From Polymyxa betae A26-41 (Eukaryota; Protista; Endomyxa: Phytomyxea): DNA of 52,179 nucleotides. Position 1 is the stretch's first letter. The number at the start of each line of letters is the position of its first letter. The DNA is taken from the NCBI GenBank assembly GCA_003693705.1, contig RBZT01000136.1, forward strand, positions 1 through 52,179, read 5' to 3'. The position numbers and the translations under genes are program-made. This document shows, in pieces, positions 5,196 to 50,168 of this stretch. Below the pieces are notes generated by a model that was given only the letters and a program-made list of their open reading frames with translations, had not been told where the DNA came from and ran no database searches.

Positions 5196-8100
5196 TTAGG
5201 TGATCAGTAGGGGCCTTAACGCTGCATCGAGATGGGCGAGCGCCGTTGGGTTTAAGTCCGGGAACCGGGCTGCTAGCTGCGGGATCAGAGCTCCGGACGC
5301 CGTTAAGGACAGCACAGCATTGGTGGCGAACTCCTGCAGATCCTGCTGTGATGGAATATCGAAGGCGGTCAGGAACAGCGCCAATTGCAGGCGGTTGGCA
5401 GCGGCGGCGTCATCGCCCCGGATCCAGGAGGCCAGCAGCGCGCCGTATTCGGCGCTGTCCGCGAACATGGCGTTCAGTCGGGCCCGCAGTCCGCACACGA
5501 AATCGGGCTGTAACAATGCGGCGGCCGAACTGGTCCTGAACAACGGATTCGCGTCAGAAACGAAATCAAAATTACGGATTCAAAGTCCGTACGCATTCAG
5601 GACGAATTTCAGCTGCCAGATGGGCAGAGAACTGGTTGGACGCCGGGCCAGTTCGACCAGAGCGGCGTGAATCTGCAGATACGTGGCCAACATCTCGGGT
5701 GTATCACGGACCAGACAGTCGTACAGGACCGCGCGGCAAAACGTCCCTAGCTGACCGGGATCGGCGCACAGATTCCTGAACGCGAACAATGGTCAGGTAA
5801 CGGAACACGGTCAGGGACGAGTACGACGGCGTCCGGTACGTACTTGGCAAAGGCGGCCAGAATCGGGTCGGCGGACAGAGACTTGACCAGATCCCGGGTC
5901 GTACCCGGATTGAGGGGGAAGGGCCGCGCCACGATCCCCAGATGTCCGAGCGGGTCCTGCAGGTACGGCAAGTGGCCGGTACGGCGCTTCACGAACAGGA
6001 CGCCCCGGTCACGGATCTGGCGGACTTGGGCATCGTCGGACTATGCAACCAGATTAGGACCGCAACTACCGATAAGAAACGCAACNNNNNNNNNNNNNNN
6101 NNNNNNNNNNNNNNNNNNNNNNNNNNNNNNNNNNNNNNNNNNNNNNNNNNNNNNNNNNNNNNNNNNNNNNNNNNNNNNNNNNNNNNNNNNNNNNNNNNNN
6201 NNNNNNNNNNNNNNNNNNNNNNNNNNNNNNNNNNAGAAACGCAACACAAAACGTCCAAACTGGAAGATAAAAGCATAAAATTCGTGGCTGGGAGAAAGGA
6301 TTTGATTGGGCGTTTGTACGAACCTTAAAATTGAGAGTAACCTGCCAGAATCTGGGACTTGCAATACGTAATGTCTTAATAGAGTATAGATCAGGTAATA
6401 AACATGGTGCTGTAATAGATAATGATTTACTATCTGAATCTGTATCAATCAATACAGGGACCTGAATAATATCATTGAATGTAGTGACACATAATCCGAA
6501 CTGAGAGTAACGTACCAGTACGGGACGTCCTGTATCGATATCACGTGTATCAAGGTAACGTTGTGTAACACCCAGCACATACAAATGTCGCATCATCTGT
6601 AGATGGTATCGGTTATCATTAGTAGAGCGGGGCCAGCGCGGCCACAGGGTCATGAGCAGGACGGCCACGGACCCAGGACTGTTGCAGACGGCGTACCGGC
6701 CCGCACCCAGGAACAGGAACCCGATCGCCATATGCACAGCCATATGAAGTCCGTACGGCATGCCGGGGCGTGCTTTCACACGCAACGACCGTAACAGCGT
6801 GAACGTCTCCAGATGCCCCGTCCCGGACATGACTACGGCCAGGGCCAGTACGGCGGCGGCCAGGCCGTCGTTCAGCGTGCACCGATCCAGTACGGCGGCG
6901 CAGCGATCGCGCAACGACCACATCCATCGGACTTTATGGGCGAGTACGGCGGCGGCGGCGGCGTTGGCAGTGCCGGCGAATCTCAGCCCGAGTGCGAGAC
7001 AGGCGCCCGCAACGGCCTGACAGTACGACTGACGGACTTGTTCCATATCCAGATCGGAATCAATGACGCCACGAACATCATCGAGGTCGTTGGCGTGGCG
7101 TAACGCGGCCGGGATCTGGGCCTCGATCCAGTCGCGGGCGGGTACGACCTGGTCCCAGAGGACCAGTGCACGGCATGTAACGCGGAGCGCAACCTGGTCC
7201 GGGCGCAGATTGGCCAACGCCGTCAGGGTCGTCGGCAGCGCTAACCGGGCCGCGATGTTCATGTCATTGGTGCGCAGATACATGAGGCCGAGGGCCAGTA
7301 TGGCCCCGGGACCAGTGGTGGTGACATTGACGGCTTCGCCCTCCTTGACGACATTGGATCGGATCGGTTCGTAGACTCCATCACTGGCAGCACCACCACG
7401 CATTAATTTAGTGAGTCGATCAGCGAGATTAAGATCAGTAAGACCAACAGCATTATCACCAAGTCCAAGTGTAACTAGACCTAATGCCATACCAGCTGAT
7501 AGAGCATAAGCTTCACGATCATCTGCTAGATGAGGAGTAGGGCGTCGACCAATCTCTGTTAGTAACATCTCCGTCATCAAACGATTCGCTGTGCCCTAAT
7601 AAGAAACTATCAAAAACAGTTTTACAAAGTTGCGACAAATTTCAAAACCCAACGAGCTGAAAAAAAACGCGATGAAAATTCAGTACCTGATAGACGAGAC
7701 CAATGCCAACCAGTGCACAGGCCTGGACCAGTACGGGGATCTCCATATCTGGAGCGACACCAGTCGGTAGTAATGCTGGAATATGCAGAGCCAGCGTCTT
7801 AGTCGCCGATGTAGACTGCGACCCGCGCTCGGACGCCGCCAGGCCCAGCACGACCGCCATGGTGGTCGGGGCGTGTTTCTTCGACAGGTACCAATAGAGA
7901 TCGGCACGGGCCAAACCACGCAGATGTCCGTGCAGGCCCAGGGCCAGTAGGACGCCGGCATGCGCATGTGTTGGCTCTACGGGCCGATTATACACAATCC
8001 AGGCACGGTGTAGAGCGACGGCGGAAGCCGCGCAAGGTACGACACGCAGACCCGCCGCAAACCCGTTATGGAGGGCGGGCCAGCACGTCCAATCGTCGGG

Positions 8101-47371: not shown

Positions 47372-50168
47372 TCAGTCCAGAGAGAATTCCGCGTTCAAAT
47401 TCAGGAAATCCTCGAACTTGAATACGATGGACGCGATGATATCGATAGGTAGATTTGTCATCATCAGAGAAAGGAAAAACGGTCGCATTGGCTTTATATC
47501 GCCTGGGTGAACAATCTCTTTGGTGAAGACCGATAAATCGATCTGTTTTGCAACCTCTCGAGCTTTCTTACGGTCCATCTTGCTGTTAAGTCCCTTCATC
47601 ATCTGATCGAACAATTCCGTGATTACAGATCTCGCAAAGACTGATTGCGACTCCAGAGAGGTGAGGTATCGTATCAAGAGTTTGTGAGTAACGAACAGGA
47701 CCTGTCCTGCAAGGTCCGCAGTTGTGGTTTCTTCACGTGATTTCTGGCAGAGATAATTTTGGAAATATGGTGGAATTTGGGAAAGAAATTGCGAGCAGAC
47801 AGTTCGGATTTGAAATTGTAGGACAGCGCGGGCTTGATGTAAGCAGTTGCGTATCGTTTCGCAGATCGGCGCCAGCTTCAAATCGGATATATTGATATCT
47901 TGAAGTGATTCTCTGACAGCGGAGAGAGCTGTTTGTTTCAATTTAGTAATATTAATCGACTGTTTCACACCGAGTTCTGAAACATAATCTCACTCCGGAT
48001 ACAACATAAACATCACTCTTACCAAAAGATCCAACCCGTTGATCCACCCCATCTAACAATACGCGATTGAGATTCGACTGTTGTTAACGTTACTGTTGTG
48101 AACTATTCAACTCCAGTTGAAACATAAACGTACCAGCTGACGAAAAAATTTGATATGGGTGGGAATTAGACAGGACATAAAAGAGTCATTCAGAATAGGT
48201 GCGGCATCACACAAGTCCGTGGTAATGGTAAATTGTGTCATTGCTGTCACTGATGTACAGAGATCGGCCAGCATTGAATCAGGTAACGCATCGACAACGT
48301 TACGCATAGTTGCGAGCAGGAAATCTTCGGCCTTAATCCGGACCTGTTCCAGGAACTCCGGCGATAAAAACGCCACGAGTTGGTGACGTTCCGAGTCTGT
48401 AAAGTCCGGAAGTTGATCATTCACAAAGTCCGCGTAGTGTTTTGCAGCGTCCCGCTCGAAGAACTTCACAAACATAACATGGATCTGCACGACCAGATTA
48501 AGTGAACGTGCAACGAACAGAGACTTCCGTCTGTCTATGCGATTCGTGTCGTGCTGGTCCATCAGCAGGATCTCGCCCATATTGACAAATCGACGTAAAA
48601 TATCCAGATGATGTGGTAAAGACTCGTATGCAGTGATGATTGCCGCTGCAGAGATGGTTTCGACAGAGGGTGGATGTAGGCAGCGGAGATGGCGGACAGC
48701 TACAGAATCCAGATCGCATTCGCTCATAGGGCTCGACATATTGATAGAAATGAATCCGTCCAGGAGTACGGCGGGCTCTGAAGAATCCCCATCAGATAAT
48801 TGAGCTTTCAATAAATGTGGAAATCTCAATTCATGTTACTCAGATAGCCGTAACAATGAACATATAGTTAATGATACAGCTGGTGAAAACGCATTCAAAA
48901 TCTCGAACCAGAATCACGTAAAGTAGACAATGCCGAACCAAAGTTTGTAAAACATAATCACATGGAGAGAAAGCTCTCATTATGCATCGGAAAGAAATAC
49001 AAAAAAATAACAAAGTTATGTAACATTACCGGGAATGGATCTCTGATAGCTCATGATCAGTAAATTAACCAGATTTTGTCGTAGAGAATTGTGAGCAGCG
49101 GAATCAGAGCTTATTGTCGTACTGGATGGTTCGCCTTGAACGTTGTTTGTGATCTTTGATTGTTCCGCTTCCTCTATACGATCCTGTATGTAGCAATAAG
49201 CTGCTTTCAAGCATGAAGATTCGACCGCCACCAAGTTACATTTACTGTGACATCAACAATCTGGGAAGCCTCACGGTCTGTTATCATATCAGAGCATGGT
49301 ATCATGACAGCCTTCGCATCAAGAGCCTTTTTCGATCGAGACTTTTTGCGCTTCTGACTTTTCGTGAGAGTCTGAAACCACGTGAATGACACATAGCATT
49401 GATCGGGCAAGTAATGTTACCAAGGAATCTTTTGTAGACAAACTTGGGCTTTGGTCGCATATCCTATCTGTCTCCTGATTGCATATCGTTACAGAGAGGC
49501 CATTTTGCGAAGAGGACTGTTTCAGGTGTAAAGATGGTAGATCCGCATCTGGATGGTTCTCAGCGATTGCAGATTCATGATGATCAAGGTCCTGCGCCTG
49601 TAGCGTATCAAGAGTATGGATATCAGATGTTACCATGTGGTCAAGATCTAACATGACCGCAGTCAGTCAGTATGGCAGTGGTGCTATCCCATAAAGTAAT
49701 GTTACCTGGATCACTGCCCGAGTCGTGTAACGAGTGGAATTCCGAGTCAAGACTGCACAGAGCATCTATGCTGCAACTGCCCAGATGGTCCAGTACGGTT
49801 TGTCGCAGCCATGAAGGTTTGATAGGACTCGATTTGACAAGACTGACGACGTGATCAAAACAATGTTCGGCGATCTCACGAAGTCCGTAATGCAGCTTTC
49901 GCGCTTCTTGAATGATGAAATCACGATCGAATCTGCTCTGATCGATTATAGCAAACACGCGTATGGATTGTAGAAGATCGGCGGTTATGATTTCAGAAAT
50001 GTCATGTTCTACCACGGACTTGACGGTGTGTTCGGCTTGACGCTTGATAGACCCAAAATTCTTCGACGATCCTTTCGGCAGCTTGACGCGATTCAGGGCA
50101 GCAGCCAAGCAGGGTTGTTTAAGAACGCTGTTTTCTACAACAGTAACAAAACTCAGAAATGCCGTCAA
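47372..50168 (-). CDS. Multi-exon hypothetical protein with a basic NLS-like tract; 5' end not resolved
   Basis: ORFs 49641..50168, 49319..49654, 49207..49410 and 49016..49234 join through short GT-AG introns (DSL/TLTKSQKRKKSRSKK; DVT/DRIEEA). The joins to 48107..48829 and 47372..47968 were not checked. Further small exons probably lie at 50440-50800. Confidence 0.55.

What the first reader, a model, noticed from the sequence alone, without database searches (positions are those of the whole stretch)
6515..49797. Octamer CCAGTACG/CGTACTGG strongly over-represented regardless of strand and frame
Hand count gives at least 29 exact copies, starting at 6515, 6845, 6887, 7728, 8241, 8533, 8631, 10210, 10297, 11958, 15024, 15148, 15399, 17566, 19045, 20625, 32422, 33745, 34625, 34884, 40539, 41151, 43207, 45122, 45156, 45330, 46199, 49118 and 49790. 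About 1.6 are expected for a random 8-mer on two strands at uniform composition. It is read as V-L-x (GTA CTG), P-Y-W, Q-Y and S-T in different genes, so one peptide motif does not explain it. One-mismatch variants (CCGGTACG, CGAGTACG, CCAGCACG) are also common. I saw none in the copia, SINE, MULE or MITE sequences, or between about 20.7 and 32.4 kb. Inference: a DNA-level signal embedded in genes, analogous to HIP1 or uptake sequences, such as a methylation target, chromatin or protein-binding site, or recombination/conversion motif.
Basis: seen in the sequence. Interest (0 to 1): 0.8.

Follow-up and report, generated by a model that had tools for sequence, protein, structure and literature searches.

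The report
Iterated eight-base word inside genes
The sugar-beet root parasite Polymyxa betae writes one eight-base DNA word (CCAGTACG, either strand) into the coding sequence of a subset of its genes far more often than chance, codon usage or protein sequence allow, much like the unexplained HIP1 word of cyanobacteria, and its function is still unknown.

Summary
All 29 copies sit at the listed coordinates, against 0.7-1.5 expected by chance.

- **Nulls:** the excess survives a synonymous-codon shuffle (27 versus 3.4) and a dicodon model (27 versus 4.2). It also survives an order-5 Markov model trained on another contig (29 versus 1.9).
- **DNA level:** every reading frame and both orientations are enriched. 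The rarest valine codon, GTA, is recruited only when the whole octamer can form. Peptides that fit the word (QYD, VLA) are over-used.
- **Not confined to this window:** the genome (Polymyxa betae, 27 Mb) holds 2763 copies against 721 for the reversed word. The longer consensus GGGCCAGTACGAC occurs 175 times against 0.
- **Not uniform:** density rises about 30-fold with the GC3 of the open frame. Copies cluster in islands. GC3-poor housekeeping genes lack the word.
- **Lineage:** 109 kb of Plasmodiophora brassicae shows no excess (6 versus 5.6).
- **Second word:** the palindrome CGGA(C/G)TCCG behaves similarly and partly shares the islands.

Best reading: the word is the recognition sequence of a protein that reads or modifies duplex DNA, kept by selection or by reader-directed repair. 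This is inferred, not shown. Function, the reader protein and the cause of the islands remain open.

The parts
6515..6522 (+). CCAGTACG copy; read on the coding (-) strand as C GTA CTG G (P-V-L-V) in the APC1 C-terminal ORF
6845..6852 (+). copy; V-L frame (A-V-L-A), APC1
6887..6894 (+). copy; V-L frame (A-V-L-D), APC1
7728..7735 (+). copy; V-L frame (P-V-L-V), APC1 middle ORF 7645-9468
8241..8248 (+). copy; V-L frame (R-V-L-A-L), APC1
8533..8540 (+). copy; Y-W frame (P-Y-W-P), APC1
8631..8638 (-). copy; Q-Y frame (L-Q-Y-G), APC1, sense orientation
10210..10217 (-). copy; S-T frame, ORF 10060-10971 (-)
10297..10304 (-). copy; S-T frame, same ORF
11958..11965 (+). copy; Q-Y frame (R-Q-Y-D), RGS paralog A; a one-mismatch inverted partner lies 17 nt upstream
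15024..15031 (+). copy; V-L frame (V-V-L-G), RGS paralog B; paralog A has CGTACTGC one codon away
15148..15155 (-). copy; S-T frame, RGS paralog B only, next to a one-codon indel relative to paralog A
15399..15406 (-). copy; Q-Y frame (R-Q-Y-D), RGS paralog B, shared with paralog A
17566..17573 (+). copy; V-L frame, ORF 17030-17749 (-)
19045..19052 (-). copy; P-V-R frame, ORF 18822-19202 (-)
20625..20632 (+). copy; V-L frame, ORF 20539-21183 (-); last copy before the word-free stretch
32422..32429 (+). copy; V-L frame in a 70-codon open frame; first copy after the word-free stretch
33745..33752 (+). copy; R-T-G frame in a 77-codon open frame
34625..34632 (-). copy; P-V-R frame, ORF 34105-35016 (-)
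34884..34891 (+). copy; V-L frame (G-V-L-A) in the hydrophobic N-terminal part of the same ORF
40539..40546 (+). copy; V-L frame (I-V-L-A), ORF 39859-41331 (-)
41151..41158 (+). copy; V-L frame (M-G-L-V-L-A-L), signal-peptide-like start of the same ORF
43207..43214 (+). copy; Q-Y frame (V-Q-Y-D), ORF 43118-43573 (+)
45122..45129 (+). copy; frame ambiguous (S-T on +, V-L on -); inverted partner 34 nt away
45156..45163 (-). copy; Q-Y frame (R-Q-Y-G)
45330..45337 (-). copy; Q-Y frame (G-Q-Y-D)
46199..46206 (-). copy; S-T frame, ORF 45692-46405 (-)
49118..49125 (-). copy; S-T frame in a 78-codon open frame
49790..49797 (+). copy; V-L frame (T-V-L-D), ORF 49644-50171 (-)
4200..20700 (.). word island 1: 16 exact copies plus most CCGGTACG, CCAGCACG and CGAGTACG variants; GC3-rich ORFs (APC1, two RGS genes and others)
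32400..50200 (.). word island 2: 13 exact copies plus variants

Best explanation
CCAGTACG (wider consensus GGGCC[A/G]GTACG[A/G]C) is a genuine, lineage-specific DNA word of Polymyxa betae. It is written into duplex DNA of coding regions without regard to strand or reading frame. Shown: it exceeds every composition, codon and dicodon null. It pulls in a rare codon only when the full octamer results. It has left an imprint on amino-acid choice. It is concentrated in GC3-rich open frames that lie in islands. Inferred: the word is the recognition sequence of a sequence-specific protein that reads or modifies double-stranded DNA. A multi-contact DNA-binding protein or one of the genome's bacterial-type amino-DNA-methyltransferases would fit. 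Recognised sites would then be retained or created preferentially in one chromosomal compartment. The sharpness of all eight positions plus a weaker 13-nt footprint, and the variant family that shares the same flanks, are what a protein footprint looks like.
For: Chance and composition are excluded: 29 versus 0.69, 1.5 by order-3 Markov, and 1.9 by an order-5 model trained on C1. Codon-aware nulls: synonymous shuffle 27 versus 3.4 (maximum 8 in 300), and C1 11 versus 3.2. Dicodon model: 27 versus 4.24, with every frame class enriched (V-L 13 versus 2.2, Q-Y 6 versus 0.47, S-T 5 versus 0.78). Whole-octamer dependence: V-L is GTA-CTG in 13 of 31 cases when flanked by C and G, against 2 of 54 otherwise (Fisher p=1.7e-5). 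GTA is the rarest valine codon, and 19% of all GTA codons in GC3>=0.6 ORFs lie inside the word. At the universally conserved HSP70 V-L-V-G-G site, P. betae has GTC GTA CTG GTC where three P. brassicae paralogs have GTC CTG GTC. Protein imprint in GC3-rich ORFs: QYD 4 versus 0.3, VLA 12 versus 4.8, VL/LV ratios 1.30 and 0.84. All eight positions are informative, and the variants share GGG..RC flanks. Genome-wide: 2763 versus 721, 13-mer 175 versus 0, 15-mer 12 versus 0 in unrelated flanks. Both strands are equal: 1366 and 1397. Candidate readers or writers exist: three PF01555 hits and one MT-A70 gene.
Against: No binding or modification data exist, and no reader protein has been identified. 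Eight to thirteen contiguous asymmetric bases is atypical for a type II-like methyltransferase. Selection on about 2000 individually weak sites is hard to sustain in a parasite with a presumably small effective population. Why a reader would need sites inside exons of only some regional gene sets (for example one VPS13 paralog and not the other) is unexplained.
Confidence: 0.45

Rival explanations
1. By-product of a context-biased mutation or heteroduplex-repair process tied to recombination, with no dedicated reader. Regions that recombine more would gain GC3 by GC-biased gene conversion and, through the same repair machinery, gain a few favoured words.
For: Word density tracks GC3 about 30-fold (0.04, 0.32 and 1.22 per kb), while 200 same-composition words change only 1.8-fold. 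GC3 and the word are regionally autocorrelated. Both gene classes are ordinary host genes. A second word, CGGA(C/G)TCCG, co-occurs. The commonest variants, CCGGTACG and CCAGCACG, are A:T to G:C transitions of the word. The two RGS paralogs show mosaic conversion tracts.
Against: An 8-13 nt specificity is much longer than known repair-context biases. There is no Vsr and no C5 methyltransferase. One-mismatch neighbours are not depleted as a conversion sink would predict. Two VPS13 paralogs of equal GC3 differ 0 versus 7. No copy was seen in about 35 kb of DNA lacking open frames, but that class is biased towards AT-rich DNA. The word itself contains three A/T positions and forces an A-ending codon against the GC3 trend.
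Confidence: 0.25
2. RNA-level signal: copies in opposite orientation within one transcript, and self-complementary words such as CGGA(C/G)TCCG, pair to shape mRNA structure, or the word is bound by an RNA-binding protein.
For: All sampled copies lie in open frames. Both orientations occur within single genes, for example APC1, RGS-B and VPS13.
Against: An RNA-binding site should be strand-specific, yet sense and antisense copies are about equal (29 and 23 of the unbiased sets are roughly 1:1). Within genes the orientations are unbalanced (6:1 in APC1), so most copies have no partner. No RNA data could be obtained.
Confidence: 0.07
3. Codon-pair or peptide usage artefact: frequent peptides such as V-V-L-A in hydrophobic segments, encoded with favoured codons, produce the word.
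For: V-L is the largest class (13 of 27). Many extended copies encode V-V-L-A-L in signal-peptide or membrane-like segments.
Against: The excess survives synonymous-shuffle and dicodon nulls. Five frame/orientation classes are enriched. GTA is the least-used valine codon and appears only with the C and G flanks that lie in neighbouring codons. P. brassicae encodes the same conserved V-L with other codons.
Confidence: 0.04
4. Relics of a dispersed repeat or transposon fragment, or an assembly artefact.
For: About 20 of the first 100 places of the 13-mer lie 102-207 nt from a contig start, always on the + strand, as if a repeat carrying the word breaks the assembly.
Against: Pairwise flank identity among 75 copies ends within about 13-15 nt, apart from paralogs. 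The twelve 15-mer loci share no other similarity. Copies sit in frame inside conserved genes (APC1, HSP70, VPS13, RGS). The assembly has 225x Illumina coverage (PMC6328671).
Confidence: 0.05

Closest known systems
HIP1 (GCGATCGC), the highly iterated palindrome of cyanobacteria (PMC5861425; PMC4390886)
   Same: An octamer hyper-abundant inside ORFs in all frames and embedded through codon choice. Its function has been unknown for decades. The debate is likewise between selection and methyltransferase-linked biased repair. One-mismatch variants are informative about a core.
   Different: HIP1 is a palindrome, is bacterial, is 15- to 300-fold over-represented across the whole chromosome with 10-90 kb periodicity, and is associated with cognate orphan methyltransferases. 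This word is asymmetric and eukaryotic. It is 3.8-fold over-represented overall and about 27-fold only in GC3-rich frames. It is confined to islands, and no cognate enzyme has been shown.
Chi (GCTGGTGG) of Escherichia coli (from general knowledge)
   Same: An asymmetric octamer that lies mostly in coding DNA and is read in frame as Leu-Val or Val-Leu type dipeptides.
   Different: Chi rides on preferred codons, is orientation-skewed with replication, and acts through RecBCD. This word uses the rarest valine codon, shows no overall strand skew (1366 versus 1397), and a RecBCD-type pathway is not expected in a eukaryote.
DNA uptake sequences (DUS/USS) of Neisseria and Pasteurellaceae (from general knowledge)
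   Same: Short words, about one per kb, on both strands. They are tolerated in coding DNA with a measurable effect on peptide content and are driven by a molecular bias rather than by gene function.
   Different: Uptake sequences are genome-wide and are explained by competence-linked uptake bias. No such route is known in a plasmodiophorid, and this word is regional.
Very-short-patch repair word bias (CCWGG excess, CTAG deficit) in enterobacteria (from general knowledge)
   Same: A word excess created by sequence-specific mismatch correction. This word also ends in CCAG/CTGG.
   Different: It needs Dcm and Vsr, and neither family is detectable here. The specificity there is 4-5 nt, not 8-13.
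Other iterated words noted by this scan in the same genome: CGGA(C/G)TCCG, GTAACG/GTAACGTTAC, and telomere-type two-unit repeats in introns
   Same: Short words over-represented in gene bodies of P. betae. CGGA(C/G)TCCG is 695 versus 133 genome-wide and shares some islands with this word.
   Different: Those words are palindromic, strand-specific or intronic. CCAGTACG is asymmetric, strand-independent and exonic.

Membership tests
HIP1-type highly iterated palindromes | the word is a palindrome | tested here: not met
   CCAGTACG differs from its reverse complement CGTACTGG; only the GTAC core is palindromic
HIP1-type highly iterated palindromes | 15-fold or greater over-representation across the genome | tested here: not met
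   3.8-fold genome-wide (2763 versus 721); about 27-fold only in ORFs with GC3>=0.6
HIP1-type highly iterated palindromes | frame-independent embedding in ORFs beyond codon usage | tested here: met
HIP1-type highly iterated palindromes | a cognate DNA methyltransferase is present | tested here: inconclusive
   PF01555 gives three exon-sized hits, MT-A70 one gene, PF00145 none. Specificity is unknown, and the loci could not be read.
HIP1-type highly iterated palindromes | sites conserved between related genomes more than synonymous sites | not testable with these tools
   No close relative was available. P. brassicae is about 31% (RGS) to 79% (HSP70) identical in protein and shows no excess.
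Chi-type recombination octamers | orientation skew relative to replication and a RecBCD/AddAB reader | not testable with these tools
No replication map exists. Contig-strand counts are equal.
DNA uptake sequences | roughly uniform genome-wide density of about one per kb | tested here: not met
   0.10 per kb overall. 45 of 100 listed copies have a neighbour within 1 kb, against 18% expected. Contig C1 has 0 copies in 70-130 kb.
Codon-pair (dicodon) bias | the excess is reproduced by a dicodon model and limited to one frame | tested here: not met
   27 versus 4.24; five frame/orientation classes enriched
Dispersed repeat or transposon fragment | copies share flanking sequence beyond the word | tested here: not met
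   Identity ends within about 13-15 nt for 75 copies. There is no cross-similarity among the twelve loci. The contig-start copies were not readable.
VSP-type repair word bias | Vsr endonuclease and a C5 methyltransferase in the genome | tested here: not met
   No match to PF03852 or PF00145; CpG observed/expected >=1 everywhere

The most novel reading that the evidence does not exclude
Polymyxa betae uses a small vocabulary of short DNA words (CCAGTACG, CGGA(C/G)TCCG and others) written into exons by codon choice and even amino-acid choice. These would act as a chromosomal-domain code read on duplex DNA by sequence-specific binding proteins or domesticated bacterial-type amino-methyltransferases. 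The code could, for example, mark one compartment of host genes for chromatin state, replication or homolog recognition. That would be a eukaryotic counterpart of HIP1-like chromosome-structure words and of nematode pairing-centre motifs.
Probability: 0.2. Interest if true: 0.85.

Novelty: new variant of a known kind. Interest (0 to 1): 0.62.

Why it matters
Iterated words embedded in coding DNA (HIP1, Chi, uptake sequences) are known in bacteria, where each revealed a DNA-handling machine. I know of no eukaryotic counterpart and found none. Here a eukaryote shows the same signature strongly enough to override codon preference and shift amino-acid usage, and only in part of its genome. If a reader or a repair bias is found, it would expose an unknown layer of genome organisation in plasmodiophorids, which are uncultivable crop-associated parasites. 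It would also give a tractable eukaryotic model for the unresolved question of selection versus biased repair in HIP1. On the practical side, the word and its GC3 dependence define two gene compartments that should be taken into account in annotation and in codon or composition-based analyses of this genome.

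Tried and rejected
1. Chance, base composition and Markov orders 0-5 were rejected.
2. A single peptide motif or codon-pair bias was rejected.
3. Splice-donor reading (CCA|GTACG): ORFs continue through the word and the downstream sequence is GC-rich, so this was rejected.
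4. A longer hidden repeat was rejected for genic copies.
5. Telomere adjacency of the contig-start copies: four CCCTAAA units in a row occur only once in the genome, so this was rejected.
6. CpG-methylation decay as a cause of the compartments was rejected: CpG observed/expected is >=1 and there is no C5 methyltransferase.
7. A "host genes versus transposons" split was rejected: GC3-poor, word-free ORFs are ordinary genes (RhoGAP, AROM, Utp12, RICTOR).
8. The local word CAAGTCCG/AAGTCCG (31 in the window) is not genome-wide, at 903 versus 960.
9. Full-text searches for the octamer returned only primers and unrelated sequences.
I did not try to read further sequence through N-padded patterns, so the contig-start copies and the methyltransferase loci were left unread.
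12. A metagenome search for close relatives of a P. betae VPS13 found none.
13. No Spongospora or Polymyxa graminis sequence turned up among HSP70 or RGS homologs.

Full report
**Observation.**
Dinucleotide-preserving shuffles give a mean of 0.69 and a maximum of 4. The first 2.85 kb of the window is a tandem K/D/E-rich coding repeat that dominates raw k-mer tables. With it masked, this octamer is the most frequent 8-mer of the window.

Markov expectations are as follows:

| Model | Expected |
|---|---|
| Order 3 | 1.5 |
| Order 4 | 3.5 |
| Order 5, fitted on the window itself | 10.7 |
| Order 5, trained on 200 kb of another contig | 1.9 |

The order-5 self-fitted value already contains the word. 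The flanks of the 29 copies are unrelated.

**Organism.**
The window is a whole contig of a 27.09 Mb, 1001-contig assembly. Earlier notes of this scan name the sugar-beet root parasite Polymyxa betae. The genome announcement reports 1,001 contigs, 27,085,946 bp and 45.1% GC, from MiSeq reads assembled with CLC at 225x (PMC6328671). It says nothing about sequence words. Genes in the window are eukaryotic: APC1 at 6066-9426 and two inverted RGS paralogs at 11866-13284 and 14125-15498.

**Is it more than codon usage?**
Twenty-six of the 29 copies lie in ORFs of at least 120 codons, and the other three lie in open frames of 70-78 codons. Permuting synonymous codons within each ORF gives 3.4 +/- 1.4 copies (maximum 8 in 300) against 27 counted in ORFs. 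In contig C1 the figures are 3.2 against 11.

A first-order codon (dicodon) model fitted on the same ORFs is conservative, because it contains the word. It expects 4.24 against 27, and 2.52 against 11 in C1. Every class is enriched:

| Frame | Peptide | Observed | Expected |
|---|---|---|---|
| nnC GTA CTG Gnn | V-L | 13 | 2.2 |
| nnC CAG TAC Gnn | Q-Y | 6 | 0.47 |
| nCC AGT ACG | S-T | 5 | 0.78 |
| CCA GTA CGn | P-V-R | 2 | 0.35 |

The clearest single result concerns V-L dipeptides. They are encoded GTA-CTG in 13 of 31 cases when the previous codon ends in C and the next begins with G. Otherwise the figure is 2 of 54 (Fisher p=1.7e-5; pooled with C1, p=3e-8). GTA is the rarest valine codon, at 11-18%. 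The pressure therefore acts on the whole octamer across four codons.

At the universally conserved HSP70 segment V-V-L-V-G-G, P. betae reads GTC GTA CTG GTC. Three P. brassicae paralogs read GTC CTG GTC. In ORFs with GC3>=0.6, peptides that fit the word are over-used: QYD 4 versus 0.3, QYG 2 versus 0.2, VLA 12 versus 4.8. VL is at 1.30 of expectation while LV is at 0.84. The counts are small, and the two RGS paralogs contribute one QYD each.

**Anatomy of the word.**
All eight positions carry information. No single-mismatch variant approaches 29 copies. When CAGTAC occurs, it is almost always flanked by C and G. The flanks add a weaker consensus, c.GGd-CCAGTACG-rCC. The enriched variants (CCGGTACG, CGAGTACG, CCTGTACG) carry the same flanks. 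The family is therefore GGGCC[A/G]GTACG[A/G]C. Among 75 copies, pairwise identity ends within about 13-15 nt apart from paralogs, so there is no longer hidden template.

**Genome-wide picture.**
- The octamer occurs 1366+1397 times against 352+369 for the reversed word, a 3.8-fold excess with no strand skew.
- The 13-mer GGGCCAGTACGAC occurs 175 times against 0.
- A 15-mer occurs 12 times against 0, in twelve loci that share nothing else.

The signal is therefore not confined to this window, but the window is an outlier: 0.56 per kb against 0.10 per kb overall (p about 7e-13).

Copies are clustered:
- 45 of the first 100 genome places have a neighbour within 1 kb, against 18% expected.
- The twelve 3-kb loci chosen by the 15-mer hold 19 further copies, against 3.7 expected.
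- Contig C1 has none in 70-130 kb and eight in 165-190 kb.

**What goes with the islands.**
Density depends steeply on the GC3 of the open frame:

| GC3 of ORF | CCAGTACG per kb | 200 permuted same-composition words per kb |
|---|---|---|
| <0.5 | 0.04 | 0.025 |
| 0.5-0.6 | 0.32 | 0.037 |
| >=0.6 | 1.22 | 0.044 |

GC3-poor, word-free ORFs are ordinary host genes (RhoGAP, the shikimate-pathway AROM protein, Utp12, RICTOR). The split is therefore not genes versus mobile elements.

GC3 is not the whole story. Two anciently diverged VPS13 paralogs on C1 (21-23% identical) have the same GC3 but carry 0 and 7 copies.

Island DNA has its own tetranucleotide signature. Window 6-20.7 kb correlates 0.86 with the twelve loci but only 0.5-0.7 with C1.

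It occurs 9 times in this window, 5 times in the twelve loci and once in 200 kb of C1. It partly shares the islands.

No copy was seen in about 35 kb lacking any 70-codon open frame. That class is AT-rich by construction, so I do not claim strict exon restriction.

**Lineage.**
In 108.7 kb around RGS and HSP70 genes of Plasmodiophora brassicae, the word occurs 6 times. An order-3 model expects 5.6, and permuted words average 5.0. The excess is therefore absent from that relative. No Spongospora or Polymyxa graminis sequence could be obtained.

**Mechanism.**
Shown: the pressure acts on double-stranded DNA, because strand and frame make no difference. It acts on a sharply defined 8-nt core with a 13-nt footprint. 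It varies by region or gene.

Inferred: the word is recognised by a sequence-specific protein. Two routes could raise its frequency. One is selection for bound or marked sites in one compartment. The other is a reader that biases mismatch correction towards its site, the model proposed for HIP1 (PMC4390886). Xu et al. argue instead for selection and a chromosome-structure role for HIP1 (PMC5861425).

The genome has no C5 DNA methyltransferase and no Vsr, and CpG is not depleted. It does have three exon-sized hits to the bacterial N6/N4 amino-methyltransferase family and one MT-A70 gene. Their specificity is unknown, and the enzyme is said to exist in P. brassicae too, which weakens the link.

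The main rival is a reader-less, recombination-linked repair bias. It accounts for the GC3 link, the regional pattern and the several words together. It fits poorly with the length of the specificity, the A-ending codon forced against the GC3 trend, and the lack of depletion of one-mismatch neighbours.

**Unexplained.**
About 20 of the first 100 places of the 13-mer lie 102-207 nt from a contig start, always on the + strand. This suggests a dispersed repeat or a gene-family 5' end that carries the word and breaks the assembly. I did not work around that limit. Reads, expression and polymorphism could not be examined either.

**Verdict.**
The DNA-level reading is supported. The comparison with HIP1 or uptake sequences is apt in kind but not in distribution. 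The function is open.

Noticed in passing
window 1-2829: A long tandem low-complexity coding repeat, read on the minus strand as K/D/E-rich units, with extreme skews (GC skew -0.47, AT skew -0.84). It dominates raw k-mer tables and must be masked before any word statistics.
   Followed up: partly
window 12394, 17382, 19306, 20673, 35770, 36175, 44546, 44931, 45222: Nine copies of the palindrome CGGA(C/G)TCCG. Genome-wide it is 695 versus 133 for the control. It partly shares the CCAGTACG islands. It may also be enriched in P. brassicae (4 sites in 109 kb against about 0.5 expected).
   Followed up: partly
window, 31 sites from 5254 to 51800: AAGTCCG/CGGACTT occurs 31 times here but 6 times in 200 kb of contig C1. 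The octamer CAAGTCCG is not enriched genome-wide (903 versus 960). It is a purely local word excess of unknown cause.
   Followed up: partly
window 5162-5175, 10038-10057, 37412-37423, 40667-40680: Short two-unit telomere-type repeats (TTAGGG/TTTAGGG) at gene borders or inside open frames. This matches another agent's note on telomere-like sites in short introns. True four-unit arrays are almost absent from the assembly (one place).
   Followed up: partly
window 11866-13284 (+) and 14125-15498 (-): Two inverted RGS paralogs, 75% identical in DNA, with a mosaic of 100%-identical tracts (for example alignment columns 255-335 and 900-1025) that look like gene-conversion tracts. One paralog-specific CCAGTACG copy sits right at the end of such a tract, next to a one-codon indel.
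   Followed up: partly
window 27486, 33615, 33686, 49020, 49411, 49696: Six copies of GTAACATTAC, three of them (33615, 33686, 49020) preceded by exon-like ...AG or ...G, as if an unusually long fixed 5' splice-site word. It is related to the GTAACG word another agent described.
   Followed up: no
window 31745-31893: Three copies of the palindrome TTTAAAGCGCTTTAAA within 150 nt, in a gene-poor stretch just upstream of the second word island.
   Followed up: no
window 19386-19484 and 20378-20430: A 26-nt tandem repeat containing CTCCACGCGTGGAG palindromes. It forms one arm of a 53-nt inverted repeat with 893 nt between the arms, which looks like a small terminal-inverted-repeat element.
   Followed up: no
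window 6086-6234: A run of 149 N inside the APC1 gene region (an assembly gap or a withheld stretch).
   Followed up: no
G000 contigs C64, C106, C162, C171, C207, C210, C236, C268, C284, C304, C469, C506, C507, C660, C672, C684 (positions 168-207): The 13-mer GGGCCAGTACGAC sits at a nearly fixed distance from the start of many contigs, always on the + strand. This is probably a repeat or gene-family end that breaks the assembly.
   Followed up: partly
G000 C964:23341-23502, C851:53672-53827, C536:4891-4962; C574:27492-28092: Exon-sized matches to the bacterial N6/N4 DNA methyltransferase family (PF01555) and one MT-A70 gene, while C5 DNA methyltransferase and Vsr are not detectable.
   Followed up: partly
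L037 (P. brassicae CDSF01000046.1) 12165-20088: In P. brassicae three 459-residue RGS genes lie in tandem next to an HSP70 gene, and RGS genes are also paired in L021 and L023. RGS genes thus tend to occur as local duplicates in both plasmodiophorids.
   Followed up: no
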